From: Dimorphilus gyrociliatus
Lineage: Eukaryota > Animalia > Annelida
Assembly (NCBI GenBank): GCA_904063045.1
Contig: CAJFCJ010000018.1
Location: 496,001-560,000, forward strand
DNA length: 64,000 nucleotides
Direction: 5' to 3'
Positions within the stretch are counted from its first letter, which is position 1, and every line of letters begins with the position of its first letter. Positions 37,979-47,695 of the stretch are shown here, piece after piece. The translations under genes were made by a program, and so were the position numbers. Below the pieces are notes generated by a model, which had not been told where the DNA came from, did not search any database, and worked only from the letters and a program-made list of their open reading frames with translations.

Positions 37979-40191
37979 TTAAAGTCCAGAAGCTGGTAAA
38001 AGAAAAATCATAACAGTAACATTATGTCGGGTTCCAGCTAAAATAGCAGCTTGAGTTAACTTTTCTGCCATGGCGTTGGCGAAACCTCTTTGAACTCTCT
38101 GCCTATTTTCTTCTACTGTTTGGCTTGATTCAGACCATGTATCCTCTCCGAGCATTATTGTAGCATGACTTTCGTCTGATTCTGAAGAAGAATCCGATAA
38201 AGTTGATCTTGTGAAATTACTGAAAACATCAGAACTATTTTCTGATTTATTATCATCCTCTATAGATTGTTTAGATAAAGGCTTGTTAAGATCATAACTG
38301 ATTCGTGATTGAACAGCGCTTAATATAACGCTATTCTGTTCAACCAAGGCTCGTACACTTGATGTGCAATGTATAGTTGGAGGTAGGCGATTACTTGGCA
38401 AAATTTGGAGGAGTAGAGTTGCAACTTCATCGGGAGTAAATACATCCCATACTCCCTTAGATGCAATAACAACAAATTGAGAAAAGTTATCCAACTTGAC
38501 CGTTATTGTTGAAGGTTTCCTAATCACAAATTTTCTCAAATCAGGATCGCCATGATTTCCAAGTCCTCTCGTTGTAGGTAAAACCCCATTGACGCACTTC
38601 TGATCCTTACTGGAGCTTAATTTTCCTCCTTGTTTAGTAACCCGGGCGACTTCAGCGGGATTTTTAGTGGAATGCTTTTTCGTTAACATGTAAGGTCTAT
38701 TTGCTCTTACCAACATTGCTTCAGAATCTCCTTTAATATAGAAAGGAAACTTTTAGATATTTTTAATGAACTTGTTTAGAACAAAATAATATTTAAAATC
38801 TTGATAAAAATACAAAAATATATATTACCACAGTTTGCAATGTGCATGTATCCAATTTGCTCAACTCTATTAATATCTGACGAAGAACTTTCATTCACTG
38901 GTCGTGGTCTATCTAAGCTATCCACCAAAATAGTCACTGTTGAACAACCACTCCACCTAACCTTTGAATTTTCTTCTTTCCCTAATGAAAGCAATAAGTC
39001 AGTTTGGAAGTGGGCTTTTTTAAAACAATCTGATATTCTTGAATTGTACATATCATCTTTATTATCATTTAAAGACTTGTTAGTAAGATTCTGTGCTCTT
39101 TCATTAATATCCTCAAGCTGCAATTTTTTTGTAGAAGATTCAATGATTTGTTGAACGATATCCTGGCTAATTTCATGCAATTTTGCTTTCTCTGAATAGG
39201 AAGATATTGGTCTACAATGTGATTTATGGTCTTCCATATGATCTTTTTTGATGTATGCAGAAGATGCTTTGTTAATAGTACAAGTACAACGTATAGACGA
39301 ATCAAATTTAATCATTTCATGCAGTAAAAAGTGATGTAATTCTGTAGCAGCAACGTGAGCTGCTCTATGTCCTCCGTATCCGTCGAAAACAGCAAAATAT
39401 GCTTTTCTAGGGTCATTACCAAAAGAATCCTGAAAAACTTTAGTATCTTCCATTTGTTCTTTCCAACGCTCGTTCTTATGACAGCACCAAGACACTGCTA
39501 GAATGTTTAAATTCGAACAATTTAATGAATTCGCTTTAACATTTACGTCAACATCGTCTCGAACTTGGCGGAAAGGTTCATATGTTTGATCCATGTGAGA
39601 TCGAACAAGCTCATAAGCTTTATCTATTTGACGTATAAGTTTTTGATCAATTAAATCATTTCCATTCGATATTTTTTTAAGAAGTAGCAATCTTCTATCC
39701 ATAAGAGAGTCGACGCTTTCTGGCATCATTCCTCTAGGAATAAGGTGTAAAACTAAATCTATATGCATTATATGTGTAATTGCAGCATATTACAACTAAA
39801 AGTACCAACTGTTTGTATTTTAAAGTGACCAGAGCTTCATGATACTTCTTATGTTCATGTAAAGCCCGTACATCGATGTGCTGAGAGCACTCTTTACACT
39901 GTTAAAGCTATAATGTAATACTTTTCTATATTTTACTTGATTATGTACCTGTAACGTTATATAGGGCTTGAAATCAACTGTCGTGGTTTCCGACGCCTCG
40001 CTCTCTGAAAATAATAATATAAGAAAACTAAGTATAATATATCCCGCCTCTACAGGTAACGATGGGAAGAATAAACCTTTCTTCCGTTCATAATCTCTTT
40101 TTCTAGAACAACACATGGAATCATAGTCCGGTGGATTCCAATCTGCAAACTCTTTTTGATCACCGTAAGAAATTGAACTATCGCTAGCCAT
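37979..40191 (-). CDS. PP2D1: PP2C-like domain-containing protein 1 with an N-terminal C2H2-like finger
   Basis: CKECSQHIDVRALHEHKKYH exon, EQMED, YFAVFDGYGG, WSGCSTV, IANCGDSEA, TRGLGNHGD. A further in-phase acidic exon at about 40490-40401 may extend the N-terminus. Confidence 0.85.
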
Positions 40192-40823
40192 GAGAACAAT
40201 GAAGTGCGAAAGGTAAATCTCGCATACCGAAAAGTAAATATACGATATTCAATAATAGTCAATAAATATTCATCCAATAGATATGATCGAATTTTACACT
40301 TATTAATGATCTTATATCCACTAATTTCAGTATATTTGTTTTACATTACGAAAAATTGATATTTTTTTATAAATAAGATGTCCCGCTGCAATGTCCTTAC
40401 CTGACCCAATTCTGAAGTACATATCTTCAGACAGTTCATCAGAACTTCCACTCCAAGACGAGTCTTCATTGTCAGATCTCTTGGATTCCTCTGTTGAAAA
40501 ATTCTTTTAATTGCTAGCAAACATTAAAACAAAGATGCACAAAAAGGAAATACATATACACATGCAAATCTCTTTTCTTTAGATAATTCGAATCTGATAA
40601 TTAATTTACTCTATTTGCTTAACGTAATTTTTTAAATTGTTGTTAGTCAACGAAATACTAATTGTTATTTATATAAATATGAATATGATTAAAGAGATAT
40701 TGTTAAATATTATGGCAAGTAAAGAAGTCTCGAGTTATTTTTTCTATACCCTACCCCAGTTAGACATTATCTAGGAACTGAGCATAGAAGATAGGAGCTG
40801 AGCTTTATAAAACTGACAATGTT

Positions 40824-40837
40824 GTTGCTAGAGATAC
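40824..40837. promoter_or_regulatory. RFX X-box-like site upstream of PP2D1
   Basis: GTTGCTAGAGATAC, an imperfect X-box palindrome about 630 nt 5' of ATG 40191. Confidence 0.5.
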
Positions 40838-41603
40838 AATGAGCAAAATATTCTTCAAAATCTCATTTATCTCAGAGCTAAGCAAAAAGTCTTTAAAACC
40901 AAAGTTAAGGCTCTATAAATGTCTATTTTCAGTGAGTCCAATAATAATATTCTAATACAAATTATGGAATAGTTTAACTAATATTATGCTATTTTATAAT
41001 AATAAACTCGTATTCTAGAAACTGGTATAAATGAAGCGGAAAAATTACAACTTTTTGAATCCTCCGATTCTTTAAAATCTTAAAACTTATTAATGTTAAA
41101 GTACTTTTTTAAAAATTACTGCAAATAATTTAGGGACAATTAAATATCAACTTGACTATATAAATTTAATTTAAATCTGCGAGAAAGTAAAACAGACCGA
41201 CGACAAAAATAAAAATATCGAGCAATAATTCAACACATGTATATATTCAATAATTTTCCTGCAGATTTAGTCAAATATTTATTGAAGAAATTATCCAGAT
41301 TTTGTCCAGATACGACAAAGCTTTATAAATGGAAATTTTAGTTTATAACATTTTAAATCTGACAGATTAATATCCTATTAAATTGTTTGCAAACCAGCAC
41401 CATCTACCGGTTTGATTATAGTCAGAAATGTAACCAAATCAGCTATTTCAAAATGGCTTCGCGCGATTAGAGGGGCGACGCCATTATACTAATCTGGCTT
41501 TATATTTACTGTGTATGCACTATGTACTTCTGAGCTCGTAGGCCTAAATATTATAAAATTCATTATATATTCAACGTAACAAAATAATAAACACAACAGG
41601 TTT

Positions 41604-42239
41604 TTAATCTTGCATTTCTGTTTGCAAGTCCTCTAAGAGAGATTCATTTCCACGTTCTGTATCGAGAACAGAATCACTGCCGCACCTTCGAACTCGAGGT
41701 TCCTGGTCTTGGGATTCTTTATGCTCAAACTTCATTTTTGCATGCAATAGGGAGTTTTCATCATTGAGGCGAAGGTTTTCACGACGTAATGTTTCTATTT
41801 CCTTACGCAATTTTCCTGTCTTATCGAATTTGGACTCCAAACTCAAACACTCTCTTACCAACTCCTCTTTTGTCAACGAGTACAAGCGCTCGACTTGATA
41901 CGAACGATATTCTTGTGAAAACTCTTTTGTTAAAAAGTCAGGATTAACACGGATATCTTCCTCGAGAGATGTATCTTCTTCGTCCGAAGATTTGTCGAAG
42001 TCGGGCGTAGTCGCCCCGTGTTGGTCAATCAAAAACTGAGTCGTATTTGACGGTGCTGTTGCTTGAAATCCATTATCTTTCTTTTCGACAGAGTTTTCAG
42101 TATTTTTCAAGTAAGGGCGCCACTTTTTCGAATGATGAGCGCCGCCTTTCTGCTTCCTACGAATCTTCTTTTTTTTTCCGTCAAGACTGTCGCCAGATGG
42201 CGTGCGAGCCCGGAATAGCGCGTTGTCTTCTATTTCCAT
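41604..42239 (-). CDS. HEXIM: HEXIM (7SK-dependent P-TEFb inhibitor), intronless
   Basis: Basic region KKKKIRRKQK..KKWRPY, APSNTTQFLIDQH, and FLTKEFSQEY..VERLYSLTKEELVRECLSLE coiled coil. First ATG at 42239; the ORF track starts at an upstream TTG. Confidence 0.9.
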   Translation of the reverse strand: MEIEDNALFRARTPSGDSLDGKKKKIRRKQKGGAHHSKKWRPYLKNTENSVEKKDNGFQATAPSNTTQFLIDQHGATTPDFDKSSDEEDTSLEEDIRVNPDFLTKEFSQEYRSYQVERLYSLTKEELVRECLSLESKFDKTGKLRKEIETLRRENLRLNDENSLLHAKMKFEHKESQDQEPRVRRCGSDSVLDTERGNESLLEDLQTEMQD

Positions 42240-43474
42240 ATTTTCCAACGCTATGTTAAACTGTGATGAATTTTGCAACTCAAGTTTTCAATCCAAACGC
42301 TAATAGATAGCGCAATAAGACAATAGATTTGAAGTTAAAGTTCGTTTTGCAAACAATTTTTGTCAGTTCACACATTTGAGCTGCTTGCAATAACTATTCA
42401 CTTCGAACTAAACCGCTTGTTTATATACATATTTACGACCGGTGAACAGCTAATATAATGTAAATCTCCGCCGAAAATAGCACCTCACATAATCCATTTC
42501 CTATGGATTCCCCATAAAATTGTCTCAATCGAATCCTCTCATTAGATATTTATAGTTACAAGACATGGAAAAATTATACAAAATAGTGATAAATTATTAA
42601 AAGACGTATAAAAATTCTCTGATAGATTTCGTGGCGTATTAATTCTGAACTTTATAGGGAGCTTTTATTTTCGTAAATACCAGTTAAATTTTGTTTTTGA
42701 AATAGCAGATTAATTTTTTCATCAAATGTTTTTAAGTTTACCATTATATCAATTTGATTTATTTATAATTAACATATTACCTTGACACTACAACTCGAAC
42801 CCGCCAAACTCTTACGTACAGAACTTTCTCCAACGCTTTGGAAGTCAGCTTTCACGCGACTTAGAAATTCTAGCAGATATAACTATTAAAACAAAAATGT
42901 TTTACAATGCTACTTTTAAAACCTAAAATATAAGGATGTTTACAGCAAATATGTATCATATTTTGAACAACATTAGTATGAGTACTTATGAAAATCTTTC
43001 GATGAATCGTTTGTTTTAACTAGCGACATCTAGTGCCGTTACAAATTATTTCATTAACAGATATGTACAAAACATTGTAGTCCCTGTTTTAAATAAAATA
43101 CCAAAGTTTTATATATCTGGGCGGGACAAAAACCCTTTAGTTAACGAGAAATGATTGAATTATAAGAACAATTAAATAAAGGATGAAAATTTTTAATAAA
43201 GTACCTTTATTGTTTGCTACTTAAGAGAATATACACATTATAGTGAAATAAAAATTTTAAAAATATTATAGTATCATCAAAATTTATTTATATAATATCA
43301 GTGTTAGCTCGTAAGGCTTATGCACAAAATTTTCCAGTTGTTTGTGATAATAGATATCGAACAACCTTAATTATGCCATCTATTTTATTTTAGAGCAAGT
43401 AAACTTAGTTAAAGATATTTTAAAGCTGCAAGTCTTGAGCGGGTAACTAAAGTTAAACGTCGTCCTAGGACAAT

Positions 43475-43488
43475 GTTACCATGGAAAC
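43475..43488. promoter_or_regulatory. RFX X-box upstream of the pLGIC first exon
   Basis: GTTACCATGGAAAC fits the X-box consensus GTNRCC-AT-RRNAAC, ending 71 nt before ATG 43560. Confidence 0.7.
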
Positions 43489-43559
43489 AGTCTACGAAGT
43501 GAAGTCTATCGTTTGTCCTCCATTTCAGAAAATAATTTCAACTTGCAAACATTGGAGAG

Positions 43560-46500
43560 ATGGCTGATCAAATTTTAAGAAGCGTTGCCAGATATTCTTC
43601 TGCTGATAGAATTAAGGTATTGTAATTTGATTTTAGAAGTTTTCTCCATAGTTTTTAACTATTTAAATAAAGGTATTTTATTCAGCATTTTAAAAATTTT
43701 CCATATCTAAAATAGGGAATAATACGAATCCAGTTTTAATTTTATAATATATATTATTTATGGTTCGAAAACATTTTGCACAGTTTAAGGTTCTCAGTTC
43801 TAATAAATATTTCGTAATAAAGTTGATTTAGGTTACTGCAGGGCTAATTTCACGAGCAGCGTCTCATTAATTCTACCCGTCCGATTATTGATCAAATCGG
43901 CTAAGGCGATAGTGCATTTGCAGTGCAGGCTATGCACAGGTACAGAGACGATCTTCCGATGTTCCGACTCTTCTGCACACAAATTAAAAATTTCGTGTTT
44001 TGTTAACATGTCTCGAAGGACTGATTCGACTGTGTGCTCTTTAGTAAAGACAATAATACCAGCAGAATTCAGGGTGAGTTGAAGGAAATTAAATTAATCA
44101 GATGGAAGAGTTTATGTTTATCTTTCTATCTTTTGATTTAGAAAAATTATTCCATTCATGTTTTGATGATAATGTAGAAAGAGCTATTTTTCATTTAGAC
44201 ACGACACATTTATTATAATTATATGCAAGGGTCTAAAGAGCATAAATTCTTTAGTTCTTAGAAAAAATCCATTTGAGCTTATCAAAAAATATTTTAAAGA
44301 CAAATGTACTATTATGCTTAAAATTTACAATCTTTTTTTCACATTTTAAGGCATCAATGAAAAATATTTTCTAAGGCTGACTTGGAATGTATGTAGTCAG
44401 CCTCTGATTTATTGATTCCCCAAACTTGCATTTGCTATCGTATTATTTGTGCATTGATATTTATTCATCATTATTACTAGTAATAAAATGATATCTTATA
44501 TTCCATGTGTGACAATTGTCAACATTTTTCTCATAAATGGTGCATAATACAACTAGAAATACACGTAATATTTTATAGGTTAGAGCATTTTATATATTAA
44601 GAGTATAATTGACAACAGCAGAGTTTTTTTTTAACACTTATTGATATTATCAAACCAACCCTTCATTTTTATTCTCATGTGAAAAAAATTCTAGGTGTTC
44701 TATTATAAATTTTCTTAGACAATGGAAAACTACAGTGATATGAAGTTGGATGATAATTTTATTGGAGGAAAACAGCTGGGAGCTCCGGTAAGCCCGGCAT
44801 GGAGTATTTTTAGATAGAAACACAATTATTAGAATGTTTAAACCCAGTAAACTGCAAAGTTCGATAAAAGTATGAAGTGAGGTGGTCATTTAGATGTGGA
44901 AATTTTAAATTATTTAGTAGTGTCTTGGTTGAAATGAAAGTTTTATTTTAAATTTCTTAGCGTTGTCAGCTTATTGACATGCACACTTGTCTGTTGGTTC
45001 ATATTCGACGCAGTGCGGCGCATAAGAAATATTTGTTTATTTTACTTACCTACTAAATAATAATTCTCTCATATAATAACTTTCAAAATTTATAGAAAAC
45101 AGTTTTGATTCACGTAACGTTCCTAAAACTTGGAGAAATCAACACATTAAAGGAACAATTCGAAGCTGATGTATTAATTCGTACAAAGTGGAGGGAACCT
45201 TCCCTTGATCGACGTGAAGCAACAGTAAAAGTCTGAATAATAAATATTAGAGATTAACTTTACTAACCAAATTCTGTTTAGCATACAACGAATGAAATCG
45301 AATTCTCGGGATTCTGGTCCCCGCGAATATTCGTTGACAACTGCATAGGTGATTTCAAAGAGACATCCTCTAAAGCTTTGGAATATAATGAAAATGGCGA
45401 AGCTTATCTAGTAGAGAGGAAAAGAGTTAAAGGATGGTTTATAGAAACCCTAGAGTTATGGGATTTTCCTTTTGATGTTCAGGTAGTAAACATAATATTT
45501 TGGATTTATTTGAGAATACATCTATGTATACAGGATCTTTCAGTAACTATAATGTCGGATACTCCATCTACTGAGGTGGATTTGGTTGAAGATCCTGAAG
45601 AAATTCATCGAATTTATAAACAATCATTCGTTGATGAACAAGAATGGTTACTTTATAAATGTATAGAATCAGAGAAGAAAGAGTTACTTAAAGATAGAGC
45701 TGATCCAACTGTGAGAAGGTCTGCTTTGACAGTTAAATGCAGAGCAGCAAGAAGACCAGCATATTTTCTCTACAACATGTTTTTGGTTACCGTAAGTTGC
45801 AAAGATAAAAATTAATTTATATCTGCATTAAGCTATCTCTAGCTATATTATTGTATTAATTAAATCTATAAGACGAAACAAGATAAACATGAGTTAAGTA
45901 TTGCTATCTTTTTGTAACAGTTTCTCATTGCCGTACTTGCTTTCGTAACTTTTGCCGTTGAACCAAATCTGGTTCAGAACCGCTTACAATTAAGCTTTAC
46001 TCTGGTTTTGACTGCTGTTGCATTCAAGTTCGTCTTAAATCAAAGCTTGCCGAAGATTTCGTATCTGACTTATCTTGATAAATATATTCTTGCAACACTG
46101 ATTGTCTTAGCTATAGTTTGTTTTTGGCATGGTGGACAGACTCTCATTTCTGATCGCCAGAGCGCTAAATTTAAAGATCAGATTGCTCTCATCATATTTG
46201 CCGGAATATACTTGGTTTACAATGCCCAGTTCTTAGTTGGAATTATTCTAGGGGTTAGATAAAATAAAAATGAATCAAATTTAGTCTTTTTGATATTTGC
46301 AGCCTTGCAAGAAGAGAAGAGAAATGAAAAAGAAAGAAGAAGAATACATTGTAAGTATAGTATCACTTTTCATAATATGTTATGCCTTTCAATGTAGCTA
46401 ATTATAAATCAATAGATACTTGTTTAGTAGATGTCAAACTCTTATTTTTCTTTTGCTCCTTTTCATAAATCGTATGAGCAGAATGTTGTAGAGCGCCAAT

Positions 46501-46577
46501 CACTTAATCTTAGAGAAAAACGAAGATCATCGTCGGATAAAATTAGAATTCGAAATGAGATATCCATCAACTATTAA
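43560..46577 (+). CDS. Cys-less (Pro-loop) pentameric ligand-gated ion channel subunit
   Basis: Exons from 45096: VLIHVTFLKLGEINTLKEQFEADVLIRTKWREP, FWSPRIFVDN, GWFIETLELWDFPFDVQDLSV, EW, RRPAYFLYN-M1, M2 NRLQLSFTLVLTAVAFK, LPKISYLTYLDKY-M3, M4. First-exon choice is uncertain. Confidence 0.88.
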
Positions 46578-47695
46578 CTACTTGCATGGCTTTATTAATA
46601 TAGAGATATTTTAGGTATGAGCTTTAGATCATGAAGTTTTCATCTCCGTTTAGAATTATTGCTACTTTTCAACTGATATTCAGTTGTCCTGTTAATCATT
46701 TGAATTTCTATTTAGAATACTGTCAAGAAACAAAGTATTACGAGGAAAATGTTGATGTTGCGCAGAAAAAAGCATAGTGCTAATAAGAAAAACTTAACTC
46801 TAAAGAATGAACATCTCTCATCTCCCCTGAATCCTGCTAATCCAGCCAGCGTTTGAACATGTTGATACTCAATTCCCTAATTTTTTTGATGTTGTTTGAA
46901 TATCCGCCTTTCTAAATTATCAAACTGGCGATTTCTTGCCTGATTGTACACCATCAAAACTTGATTTAACAAAATATTTTGCTTTGAACTGCTGTCGTGA
47001 CTTTAATTATTGTTTTCAGTTTTGTATGATACACTACATGAATGTATTAGTGATTAAGTTTAATGCTCTTCTCATAATTATAGAATAAAGACAAATAATA
47101 AACTGTCAATCTTGTTCAACTGTCACACTGTAGAAATAGCGATTGATCACTATTAACTGGTGATGTATTTCTAAATAATTTGGAAACTGTACTAAGCAGA
47201 AATGTTCATTTTAAGGTATATTAAGTTCTTCGGGAAAGGTCAGAGAATCAATTTTGATTATAGGTTTAAGCCAAGTATTAAAATTATAAATAATACATTT
47301 ATATTAATATATTCGTTCATTTCCATGACAAATATAGCTAATTAGAAATTTTATAGAGTTATGTGATGTGTAAGAAAGTTTTAAAAATATGAATGTTTTA
47401 CTATGTAATGCTCAAGCTTTCAAAATGGCGGTGACCAGTCCGTCTATATGAGAAATTTAAACACACTTCGTAAGGTATGAGCGAAATAATTCTCGTAAAA
47501 GACTTATTTATTTTTAAATTAGTTTATGATTTCAAATTCAAAAGAACAATTATTCTATAGTAAAATTTTTATTCATATGATATACGAAAATAAAGGTGAA
47601 GGTCGTGTATATGCAAAGAAAAATCCCTGTCAGAATCTGTAATTTAATCATAAAATGAAGCATCGCTAGACACTTGTAACTTCACTCTGCTTATA

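What the first reader, a model, noticed from the sequence alone, without database searches (positions are those of the whole stretch)
43560..46577. Cys-less pLGIC with no signal peptide and a cytosolic-type C-tail: possible inverted-topology channel
Seen: the loop equivalent to the Cys-loop (FIETLELWDFPFDVQDL) keeps the FPFD proline but has no cysteines. The M3-M4 loop is only about 15 aa, as in bacterial GLIC/ELIC. None of the candidate N-termini is hydrophobic. M4 is followed by a basic cluster (PCKKRREMKKK) and a tail with a PKA-type site (KRRSSS). The pre-M2 sequence is VQNR, neither anionic PAR nor cationic GEK. Known: canonical pLGICs have a cleaved signal peptide, an extracellular N-domain and a short extracellular C-terminus, and Cys-less members exist in some invertebrates. 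Inference: by the positive-inside rule both termini are cytosolic, so the ligand-binding domain would sense an intracellular ligand.
Basis: partly seen in the sequence, partly recalled or inferred. Interest (0 to 1): 0.8.

Follow-up and report, generated by a model that had tools for sequence, protein, structure and literature searches.

The report
Channel whose sensor probably faces inward
This annelid gene makes a relative of neurotransmitter-receptor channels that has no export signal, and its charge pattern suggests the ligand-sensing half sits inside the cell, which I found unreported for this channel superfamily and which remains untested.

Summary
This is a real, expressed 8-exon gene (43560-46856, + strand). 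It encodes a 413-aa subunit of the spiralian Cys-less, ELIC-like branch of pentameric ligand-gated channels.

**Gene model.** RNA contigs confirm every splice junction. There are two alternative 5' exons. Both have in-frame stops upstream and neither is hydrophobic, so no signal peptide is encoded.

Most of it holds: FPFD loop without cysteines, 15-aa M3-M4 loop, VQNR, PCKKRREMKKK. The KRRSSS tail does not hold. It lies in an intron. The real tail is 62 aa with 29% K/R.

**Family evidence.**
- 96 complete relatives and 56 rotifer relatives show no strongly hydrophobic N-terminus.
- In 53 of 53 non-redundant members, K+R favours the ligand-binding-domain side (median 13 against 3).
- A polybasic RRRR-x-M motif follows M4.
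- The domain has one conserved, unpaired cysteine and no conserved glycosylation site.
- N-extensions look disordered (no Pfam domain, Ser/Arg-rich) and are enriched in RRxS/T.

**Reading.** Sequence rules therefore predict both termini, and the ligand-binding domain, in the cytosol. This is unproven: I ran no trained topology predictor, had no positive control, and there is no experiment.

**Novelty.** The family has been known since 2016 (PMC4795631). I found no paper on its topology. The scan already flagged two paralogues in this genome with the same reading (s1-080638, s1-084658).

The parts
43475..43488 (.). Palindromic RFX X-box-like motif GTTACCATGGAAAC, 72 nt upstream of the exon-1 ATG. 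Possible regulatory site only.
   Evidence: one of only two sites in 64 kb. No such site upstream of the same-genome paralogue or the Capitella orthologue.
43560..43616 (+). Coding exon 1 (short form): MADQILRSVARYSSADRIK. Not hydrophobic.
   Evidence: Joint 43616|44719 in RNA contigs. In-frame stop at 43533-43535 upstream of the ATG.
44008..44073 (+). Alternative 5' coding start (long form of exon 1, donor at 44073): MSRRTDSTVCSLVKTIIPAEFR.
   Evidence: Joint 44073|44719 and a contiguous contig 43587-44073. Stops upstream in this frame.
44719..44787 (+). Exon 2: TMENYSDMKLDDNFIGGKQLGAP. Not conserved in relatives.
   Evidence: Joints. No match in any relative.
45096..45230 (+). Exon 3: strands beta1-beta2 of the ligand-binding domain (HVTFLKLGEINTLKEQFEADVLIRTKW).
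   Evidence: Joints 44787|45096 and 45230|45282. Weak Pfam Neur_chan_LBD hit. 68% identical to P0165.
45282..45482 (+). Exon 4: middle of the ligand-binding domain, ending in the cysteine-free Pro-loop ETLELWDFPFDVQ (45438-45482).
   Evidence: All family-invariant residues are kept.
45534..45791 (+). Exon 5: rest of the ligand-binding domain (conserved SFVDEQEW), basic pre-M1 KCRAARRP, and the start of M1 (45759-45791).
45921..46253 (+). Exon 6: end of M1 (45921-45959), M2 (45981-46043, 0' Arg, 6' Thr, 9' Leu), M3 (46071-46136), 15-aa M3-M4 loop (46137-46181), M4 (46182-46253).
   Evidence: Pfam Neur_chan_memb E 2.3e-6. PDB GABA-A gamma2 and ELIC E about 3e-7. Joints.
46303..46350 (+). Exon 7: polybasic post-M4 motif PCKKRREMKKKEEEYI, conserved across the family as RRRR-x-M..KD-x-EY.
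   Evidence: Joints 46253|46303 and 46350|46716. Motif consensus. Predicted helix in the relative's model.
46716..46856 (+). Exon 8, coding part: basic tail NTVKKQSITRKMLMLRRKKHSANKK...PASV plus stop. The 3' UTR runs to at least 47430.
   Evidence: Joint 46350|46716 and contig 46716-47430. Translation.
46431..46577 (+). It is not part of the main coding sequence and lies in the last intron. An alternative exon ending at 46614 overlaps it.
   Evidence: main joint 46350|46716, minor joint 46614|46716. Sequence read directly.

Best explanation
The gene encodes one subunit of a pentameric channel from the Cys-less, ELIC-like branch of the pLGIC (Pro-loop receptor) superfamily. That branch is spread through Spiralia.

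Shown:
- The gene is spliced and expressed.
- It keeps every family-invariant residue.
- It encodes no N-terminal hydrophobic signal.
- Its close relative folds as a complete pLGIC subunit.

Inferred mechanism:
1. With no signal peptide, the roughly 225-aa N-terminal beta-sandwich folds in the cytosol.
2. M1, preceded by KCRAARRP, inserts as an N-in signal anchor. M2 to M4 then follow.
3. The short M1-M2 and M3-M4 loops therefore face outside (or a lumen).
4. The ligand-binding domain, the M2-M3 loop and the 62-aa polybasic tail face the cytosol.

The coupling elements (Pro-loop, beta1-beta2 loop, M2-M3 loop) all stay on one side, so gating can work as in any pLGIC. The agonist, however, would be an intracellular molecule or ion. 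A cytosolic domain would also explain why the Cys-loop disulfide is absent. The ligand, the ion selectivity (pore VQNR, 6' Thr, 9' Leu, no -1' Glu) and the membrane in which it sits are unknown.
For: Gene and expression:
- Nine GT..AG joints in spliced contigs of run X1.
- In-frame stops upstream of both start codons.
- The nearest upstream ORFs are on the other strand.

Family membership:
- Pfam Neur_chan_memb on exon 6 and PDB hits.
- 677 representative clusters at E<=1e-3 for the domain piece.
- Named relatives in molluscs, annelids, a brachiopod, nemerteans and flatworms and rotifers.
- 65% identity to P0165.
- 20 of 20 invariant and 38 of 39 near-invariant residues kept.
- The family profile is closest to ELIC, E 4e-29.
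- AlphaFold2 model of P0165 has pLDDT 90.4 and pTM 0.82, and matches GlyR and ELIC at TM 0.7-0.8.

Topology:
- 96 of 96 complete members have no N-terminal 9-aa window with mean hydropathy >=2.5. 56 of 56 rotifer relatives likewise.
- Only 4 of 96 have an uncharged hydrophobic run of 10 or more.
- K+R on the ligand-binding-domain side against the opposite side is median 13 against 3, larger in 53 of 53 non-redundant members.
- The tail is 25% K+R.
- The RRRR-x-M motif after M4 is conserved.
- There is a single conserved, unpaired Cys (45 of 53) and no shared N-x-S/T column (at most 3 of 53) in the domain.
- M3-M4 loops hold more N-x-S/T sites than shuffles (16 against 9.3+-2.6). Three flatworm loops have Cys pairs.
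- N-extensions have no Pfam domain and are enriched in RRxS/T (20 against 8.6+-3.0).
Against: - All topology evidence comes from simple rules that I coded myself. I ran no trained predictor (SignalP, DeepTMHMM). I had no control set of canonical pLGICs, because I could not obtain any by reference.
- My hydropathy threshold could miss weak signal peptides.
- N-x-S/T sites are also somewhat enriched in the N-extensions (47 against 35.7+-5.0), which does not fit a cytosolic location.
- The depletion of such sites in the folded domain is not specific, since S/T-P is depleted there too.
- Flatworm members have a basic helix-like stretch just before M4 that resembles the cytoplasmic MA helix of canonical receptors.
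- Proteins with long N-terminal ectodomains and no signal peptide do exist (neuregulin-1; my own knowledge).
- A helix after M4 on the ligand-binding-domain side also occurs in canonical receptors (alpha7 latch; my own knowledge).
- The joined 413-aa protein itself was never searched or folded.
Confidence: 0.6

Rival explanations
1. Canonical orientation reached without a cleavable signal peptide. M1 would act as a reverse (N-out) signal anchor, or a weak N-terminal segment would act as a signal. The ligand-binding domain and the basic tail would then be extracellular or lumenal, and the channel would be an ordinary receptor for an external ligand.
For: - The fold and all coupling elements are those of ordinary pLGICs.
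- N-x-S/T sites are slightly enriched in the N-extensions.
- Flatworm M3-M4 loops end in a basic, MA-like stretch.
- Mollusc N-termini share a mildly hydrophobic motif, M-[ST]-T-A-I-A-Y-S-F-M.
- Signal-less N-out proteins are known (my own knowledge).
Against: - The N-terminal part is 190 to more than 600 aa, folded or strongly basic, which disfavours N-tail translocation.
- The flank before M1 carries 3-6 K/R against 0-2 after it. The first 25 residues of the tail carry a median of about 9 K/R.
- There is no conserved disulfide or glycosylation site in the domain.
- There is no strongly hydrophobic N-terminus in 152 gene models from many genomes.
Confidence: 0.27
2. The missing signal peptide is a gene-model artefact: an unseen upstream exon supplies it.
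For: - Assembled contigs cannot show transcript 5' ends.
- One contig has a 95-nt loose end at 43689 that matches nothing in the window.
Against: - Only two joints enter exon 2, and both come from exons with in-frame stops upstream of their ATG.
- The upstream neighbouring ORFs lie on the opposite strand.
- RefSeq and other models from dozens of species show the same lack.
Confidence: 0.05
3. The gene is decaying, or its product no longer works as a channel.
For: - No function is known for any member of this clade.
- The N- and C-terminal exons are not conserved.
Against: - The frame is open through 8 exons.
- The gene is expressed and correctly spliced.
- 58 of 59 conserved family residues are kept, including the pore 0' Arg, 6' Thr and 9' Leu.
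Confidence: 0.03

Closest known systems
Metazoan Cys-less 'Pro-loop receptors' (Jaiteh, Taly and Henin 2016, PMC4795631)
   Same: This is the family the gene belongs to: no Cys-loop cysteines, conserved loop proline, dominated by Lophotrochozoa with flatworm members.
   Different: The paper is a phylogenetic inventory. Its main text never mentions signal peptides (0 occurrences) and does not discuss topology. No member has been characterised.
ELIC (Erwinia ligand-gated ion channel) and GLIC, bacterial pLGICs
   Same: ELIC is the best solved-structure match of the family profile (E 4e-29). Shared features are no Cys-loop disulfide, no N-terminal helix in the model, a short M3-M4 loop, and the same fold.
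   Different: The bacterial channels are exported with a signal peptide, have a periplasmic ligand-binding domain and a short C-terminus (my own knowledge). This gene is a spliced animal gene with no signal and a long polybasic tail.
Canonical animal Cys-loop receptors (GlyR alpha3, GABA-A gamma2, 5-HT3A)
   Same: The overall subunit fold matches at TM 0.70-0.72. M2 has 0' Arg, 6' Thr and 9' Leu. The Pro-loop FPFD and the M2-M3 loop proline are present.
   Different: This gene has no disulfide, no signal peptide, a 15-aa rather than a long cytoplasmic M3-M4 loop, and a long basic C-tail rather than a short external one. Its pore entrance is VQNR, neither PAR nor GEK.
Channels gated from the cytosolic side (CNG/HCN, IP3 and ryanodine receptors)
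   Same: If the predicted topology is right, the working principle is the same: a cytosolic ligand-binding domain opens a membrane pore.
   Different: These are unrelated folds and families. This is an analogy only.

Membership tests
pLGIC / Pro-loop receptor superfamily | N-terminal beta-sandwich domain followed by four transmembrane helices | tested here: met
   AlphaFold2 model of P0165 (65% identical to the window exons): strands, then 4 helices, pLDDT 90.4. Matches GlyR and ELIC at TM 0.7-0.8. Pfam and PDB hits on the window exons.
pLGIC / Pro-loop receptor superfamily | Conserved proline in the beta6-beta7 loop (F/YPxD) | tested here: met
   WDFPFDVQ at 45459-45482. Invariant P110 and D112 kept.
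pLGIC / Pro-loop receptor superfamily | M2 pore helix with 0' basic residue and 9' leucine | tested here: met
   NRLQLSFTLVLT in exon 6. Invariant R221 and L230 kept.
pLGIC / Pro-loop receptor superfamily | Assembly into pentamers and ligand-gated conductance | not testable with these tools
   Only a monomer could be folded. No functional data exist for any clade member in the papers I searched.
Metazoan Cys-less clade (Jaiteh et al. 2016) | Both Cys-loop cysteines absent | tested here: met
   The loop FIETLELWDFPFDVQDL has no Cys.
Metazoan Cys-less clade (Jaiteh et al. 2016) | Groups with lophotrochozoan and flatworm Cys-less sequences rather than with Cys-loop receptors | tested here: inconclusive
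   All named close hits are spiralian Cys-less proteins, and solved Cys-loop receptors score far lower. I built no tree against the paper's dataset.
Canonical animal Cys-loop receptors | Cys-loop disulfide | tested here: not met
   No cysteines in the loop. The family has only one conserved, unpaired Cys in the domain.
Canonical animal Cys-loop receptors | Cleavable N-terminal signal peptide | tested here: not met
   Both RNA-supported N-termini are hydrophilic, with stops upstream. This rests on a heuristic only, with no trained predictor.
Canonical animal Cys-loop receptors | Long cytoplasmic M3-M4 domain and short extracellular C-terminus | tested here: not met
   The M3-M4 loop is 15 aa and the C-tail is 62 aa with 18 K/R.
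Prokaryotic pLGICs (ELIC/GLIC type) | Bacterial or archaeal gene encoding an exported protein | tested here: not met
   This is an 8-exon spliced gene in an animal genome. The scan of 185,579 prokaryotic genomes found only one exon-like piece, in a doubtful MAG contig.
Proposed N-in/C-in ('inside-facing') pLGICs | No signal peptide, and positive charge concentrated on the ligand-binding-domain side | tested here: met
   This gene: 15 K/R on the domain side against 3 on the other (counted). Family: 53 of 53. No strongly hydrophobic N-terminus in 96 plus 56 members.
Proposed N-in/C-in ('inside-facing') pLGICs | Experimentally cytosolic ligand-binding domain | not testable with these tools
   Needs tag accessibility, glycosylation mapping or protease protection.

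The most novel reading that the evidence does not exclude
The whole spiralian Cys-less pLGIC clade (hundreds of genes in molluscs, annelids, nemerteans, brachiopods, rotifers and flatworms, including schistosomes and tapeworms) works inside-out. Its 'extracellular' domain would be cytosolic and sense an intracellular messenger, ion or metabolite. The absence of the Cys-loop disulfide would follow from life in the reducing cytosol. The polybasic post-M4 helix would dock on the inner leaflet.
Probability: 0.5. Interest if true: 0.9.

Novelty: new variant of a known kind. Interest (0 to 1): 0.72.

Why it matters
Every pLGIC studied so far, from bacteria to humans, senses ligands outside the cell. 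A clade that senses the cytosol would be a new mode of use for one of the best-studied channel architectures. It would offer a simple reason why these members lack the disulfide. It would also change how these orphans should be deorphanised: inside-out patches and intracellular ligands rather than bath-applied transmitters. The clade is large and includes parasitic flatworms, where its members are currently labelled GABA receptor subunits, so correct topology also matters for drug-target work.

Tried and rejected
**Left out**
- The exons were searched singly by reference, and the closest stored relative (P0165) stood in for folding.

**Led nowhere**
- Scanning prokaryotic genomes for relatives, to serve as signal-peptide and charge controls, gave only one exon-like piece in a 'Metamycoplasmataceae' MAG. 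This is probably host DNA. No positive control set was therefore available.
- Looking for fused cytosolic domains in long family members gave no Pfam hit beyond the two channel domains.
- The two loose contig ends (at 43689 and 46398) match nothing in the window and remain unexplained.
- Alignment-based loop boundaries failed for most rotifer relatives. Only 6 of 56 could be scored, and all 6 showed the same charge bias.

**Tested and weakened**
- The X-box motif is exact here but absent upstream of the same-genome paralogue and the Capitella orthologue. A ciliary link is therefore unsupported.
- I had meant to use the depletion of glycosylation sites in the domain as evidence. It turned out to be non-specific.

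**Literature**
- Searches for any report of signal-less or inverted pLGICs found none.
Full report
**What is there**

The window is AT-rich (about 32% G+C). Earlier notes of this scan name the genome as the annelid Dimorphilus gyrociliatus, close to the Hox cluster.

The finding is a spliced gene on the + strand. Spliced contigs of one public run (X1, 99%+ identical) give nine GT..AG joints:
- 43616|44719
- 44073|44719
- 44787|45096
- 45230|45282
- 45482|45534
- 45791|45921
- 46253|46303
- 46350|46716
- a minor 46614|46716

All exons are in phase 0. The main product is 413 aa, from the ATG at 43560 to the stop at 46854-46856. The last exon runs on to at least 47430 as 3' UTR.

**The 5' end**

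Two donors, at 43616 and 44073, join the same acceptor at 44719. They give two N-termini:
- MADQILRSVARYSSADRIK
- MSRRTDSTVCSLVKTIIPAEFR, from the ATG at 44008

Both are followed by TMENYSDMKLDDNFIGGKQLGAP and then strand beta1. In-frame stops lie upstream of both starts. No other joint enters exon 2. The nearest upstream ORFs are on the opposite strand. None of the three N-terminal peptides has an uncharged run longer than 7 residues. Assembled contigs cannot show true transcript starts, so a far upstream exon is not formally excluded, but nothing points to one.

These features are all as described:
- the cysteine-free loop FIETLELWDFPFDVQ|DL
- the 15-aa M3-M4 loop
- VQNR before M2
- the PCKKRREMKKK cluster after M4

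The KRRSSS tail is not. That ORF (46431-46577) lies in the intron between 46350 and 46716. The real tail is PCKKRREMKKKEEEYI plus NTVKKQSITRKMLMLRRKKHSANKKNLTLKNEHLSSPLNPANPASV.

**What family it is**

- Exon 6 hits Pfam Neur_chan_memb (E 2.3e-6).
- Exon 6 also hits solved GABA-A gamma2 and ELIC chains (E about 3e-7). The domain exons barely hit anything solved.
- A full scan of 1.84 billion representative proteins with the domain piece 45282-45791 (open through a 51-nt intron) found 677 clusters at E<=1e-3 and 240 at E<=1e-10.
- Named relatives are bivalves, gastropods, cephalopods, annelids (Capitella, Owenia, Helobdella, Lamellibrachia), a second D. gyrociliatus gene (DgyrCDS13991), Lingula, nemerteans, flatworms (Echinococcus, Opisthorchis, Macrostomum, Schistosoma) and rotifers.
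- Databases call them 'cys-loop ligand-gated ion channel-like', 'proton-gated ion channel-like' or GABA receptor subunits.

This is the metazoan Cys-less clade described by Jaiteh, Taly and Henin in 2016 (PMC4795631).

The closest complete relative, P0165, is 65% identical over exons 3-7. Exons 1, 2 and 8 match nothing. The window gene keeps 20 of 20 invariant and 38 of 39 near-invariant family residues. A profile of 55 members (A1) is closest to ELIC among solved structures (E 4e-29). An AlphaFold2 model of P0165 built on A1 has pLDDT 90.4 and pTM 0.82. It shows a beta-sandwich, four helices and a fifth helix right after M4. It matches GlyR alpha3 and ELIC at TM 0.7-0.8.

**Topology: evidence for an inside-facing domain**

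I aligned 153 relatives of 330 aa or more and kept 96 with all four helices. Of these, 53 are non-redundant at 80% core identity.

1. *No N-terminal signal.* No member has a 9-residue window with mean Kyte-Doolittle hydropathy of 2.5 or more in its first 45 residues. The median is 1.31, against 2.3-3.0 for M1 to M4. The same is true of 56 rotifer relatives, where the highest values are the beta1 strand itself. Only 4 of 96 have an uncharged run of 10 or more with mean hydropathy of 1.5 or more.
2. *Charge bias.* I counted K+R on the ligand-binding-domain side (15 residues before M1, the M2-M3 loop, the first 25 tail residues) and on the opposite side. The medians are 13 and 3, and the domain side is larger in 53 of 53. 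For the window gene the count is 15 against 3.
3. *Post-M4 motif.* The tail begins with a conserved polybasic motif (consensus RRRR-x-M..KD-x-EY) and is 25% K+R overall.
4. *No disulfide or glycosylation signature.* The domain has a single conserved cysteine, unpaired, six residues before M1 (45 of 53). No N-x-S/T column is shared by more than 3 of 53 members.
5. *N-extensions.* They have a median length of 70 aa and reach several hundred aa in flatworms. They have no Pfam domain, are Ser/Arg-rich, and are enriched in RRxS/T (20 against 8.6+-3.0 in shuffles).
6. *M3-M4 loops.* They hold more N-x-S/T sites than shuffles (16 against 9.3+-2.6). In three flatworm lineages the long loop carries a Cys-x7-9-Cys pair just before M4.

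By the positive-inside rule and the charge-difference rule for signal anchors (established knowledge), this predicts N-in/C-in. The beta-sandwich, the M2-M3 loop and the tail would be cytosolic, and the two short loops would be external or lumenal.

**Topology: evidence against, and limits**

- These are my own simple rules. I ran no trained predictor.
- I could not obtain canonical or bacterial pLGICs by reference to serve as positive controls. The prokaryote scan returned only one exon-like piece in a doubtful MAG.
- Weak signal peptides can score below my threshold.
- N-x-S/T sites are also enriched in the N-extensions (47 against 35.7+-5.0).
- The depletion of such sites in the folded domain is not specific, because S/T-P is depleted there too.
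- Flatworm loops end in a basic helix-like stretch that recalls the cytoplasmic MA helix.
- Signal-less proteins with long N-terminal ectodomains exist (my own knowledge).

I therefore put the inside-facing reading at about 0.6 and canonical orientation at about 0.27.

**Function**

Nothing here identifies the ligand, the selectivity or the membrane. The pore has 0' Arg, 6' Thr and 9' Leu. It has Asn and Gln at -1' and -2', matching neither the cation (GEK) nor the anion (PAR) signature. The domain is acidic, with strongly conserved ENLEL-x-DFPFD and SFVDEQEW motifs.

An exact X-box motif lies 72 nt upstream of the ATG. It is absent upstream of the paralogue and the Capitella orthologue, so a ciliary role is only a lead.

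**Novelty**

The family is known (PMC4795631) and is repeated in reviews (PMC8634148). Flatworm members may have been among those treated as GABA-rho-like Cys-loop channels in PMC6881066; I did not check this against that paper's gene list. In six full-text searches I found no paper that discusses missing signal peptides or an inverted topology for any pLGIC.

Within this scan, two other loci of the same genome were flagged the same way. A follow-up of one of them reached the same reading (s1-080638, s1-084658). That is agreement between similar methods, not independent evidence.

**Left out**

The joined spliced protein has no reference, so I did not search or fold it. All searches used single exons or stored relatives.

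Noticed in passing
window 43475-43488: Exact palindromic RFX X-box consensus GTTACCATGGAAAC, 72 nt upstream of the channel's ATG, and one of only two sites in the window. No comparable site lies upstream of the D. gyrociliatus paralogue (L002) or the Capitella orthologue (L003).
   Followed up: partly
window 43587-44073: Two alternative donors (43616 and 44073) feed the same acceptor at 44719. In the long form, the first ATG opens only a 21-codon ORF (MADQ...RIKVL*), and the channel frame restarts at 44008. The long form has the higher contig depth.
   Followed up: partly
window 46398-46614: An alternative exon ends at 46614 and is spliced to 46716. One contig starts at an AG acceptor at 46398 with 255 preceding letters that match nothing in the window. 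A second loose end of 95 nt lies at 43689.
   Followed up: partly
L001:1501-1695: A contig filed as a Metamycoplasmataceae MAG (CBDHHR010000831.1) holds an exon-sized piece 48% identical to this animal channel family. It is probably host DNA binned with the bacterium.
   Followed up: no
P0170, P0004, P0178, P0179, P0192 (mollusc and related homologues), N-termini: A short conserved, mildly hydrophobic N-terminal motif, M-[ST]-[TA]-[AV]-[IA]-A-Y-[SN]-[FY]-M, is followed by a polybasic and serine cluster just before strand beta1. Its function is unknown.
   Followed up: no
P0015, P0020, P0018 (flatworm homologues), M3-M4 loops: The long flatworm M3-M4 loops carry several N-x-S/T sites, Ser/Thr-rich runs and a Cys-x7-9-Cys pair just before M4. 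This would fit an external loop.
   Followed up: partly
P0003 (1034 aa) and P0005 (592 aa): P0003 is a gene model that fuses a stretch I took for retrotransposon sequence to two tandem copies of the channel's ligand-binding domain. P0005 holds two tandem channel copies. Both are likely annotation artefacts or tandem duplicates read as one gene.
   Followed up: no
window 37979-42278, minus strand: The ORFs upstream of the channel gene (245, 330 and 224 aa) lie on the opposite strand, so the channel gene is divergently oriented to its neighbours. I did not identify them.
   Followed up: no
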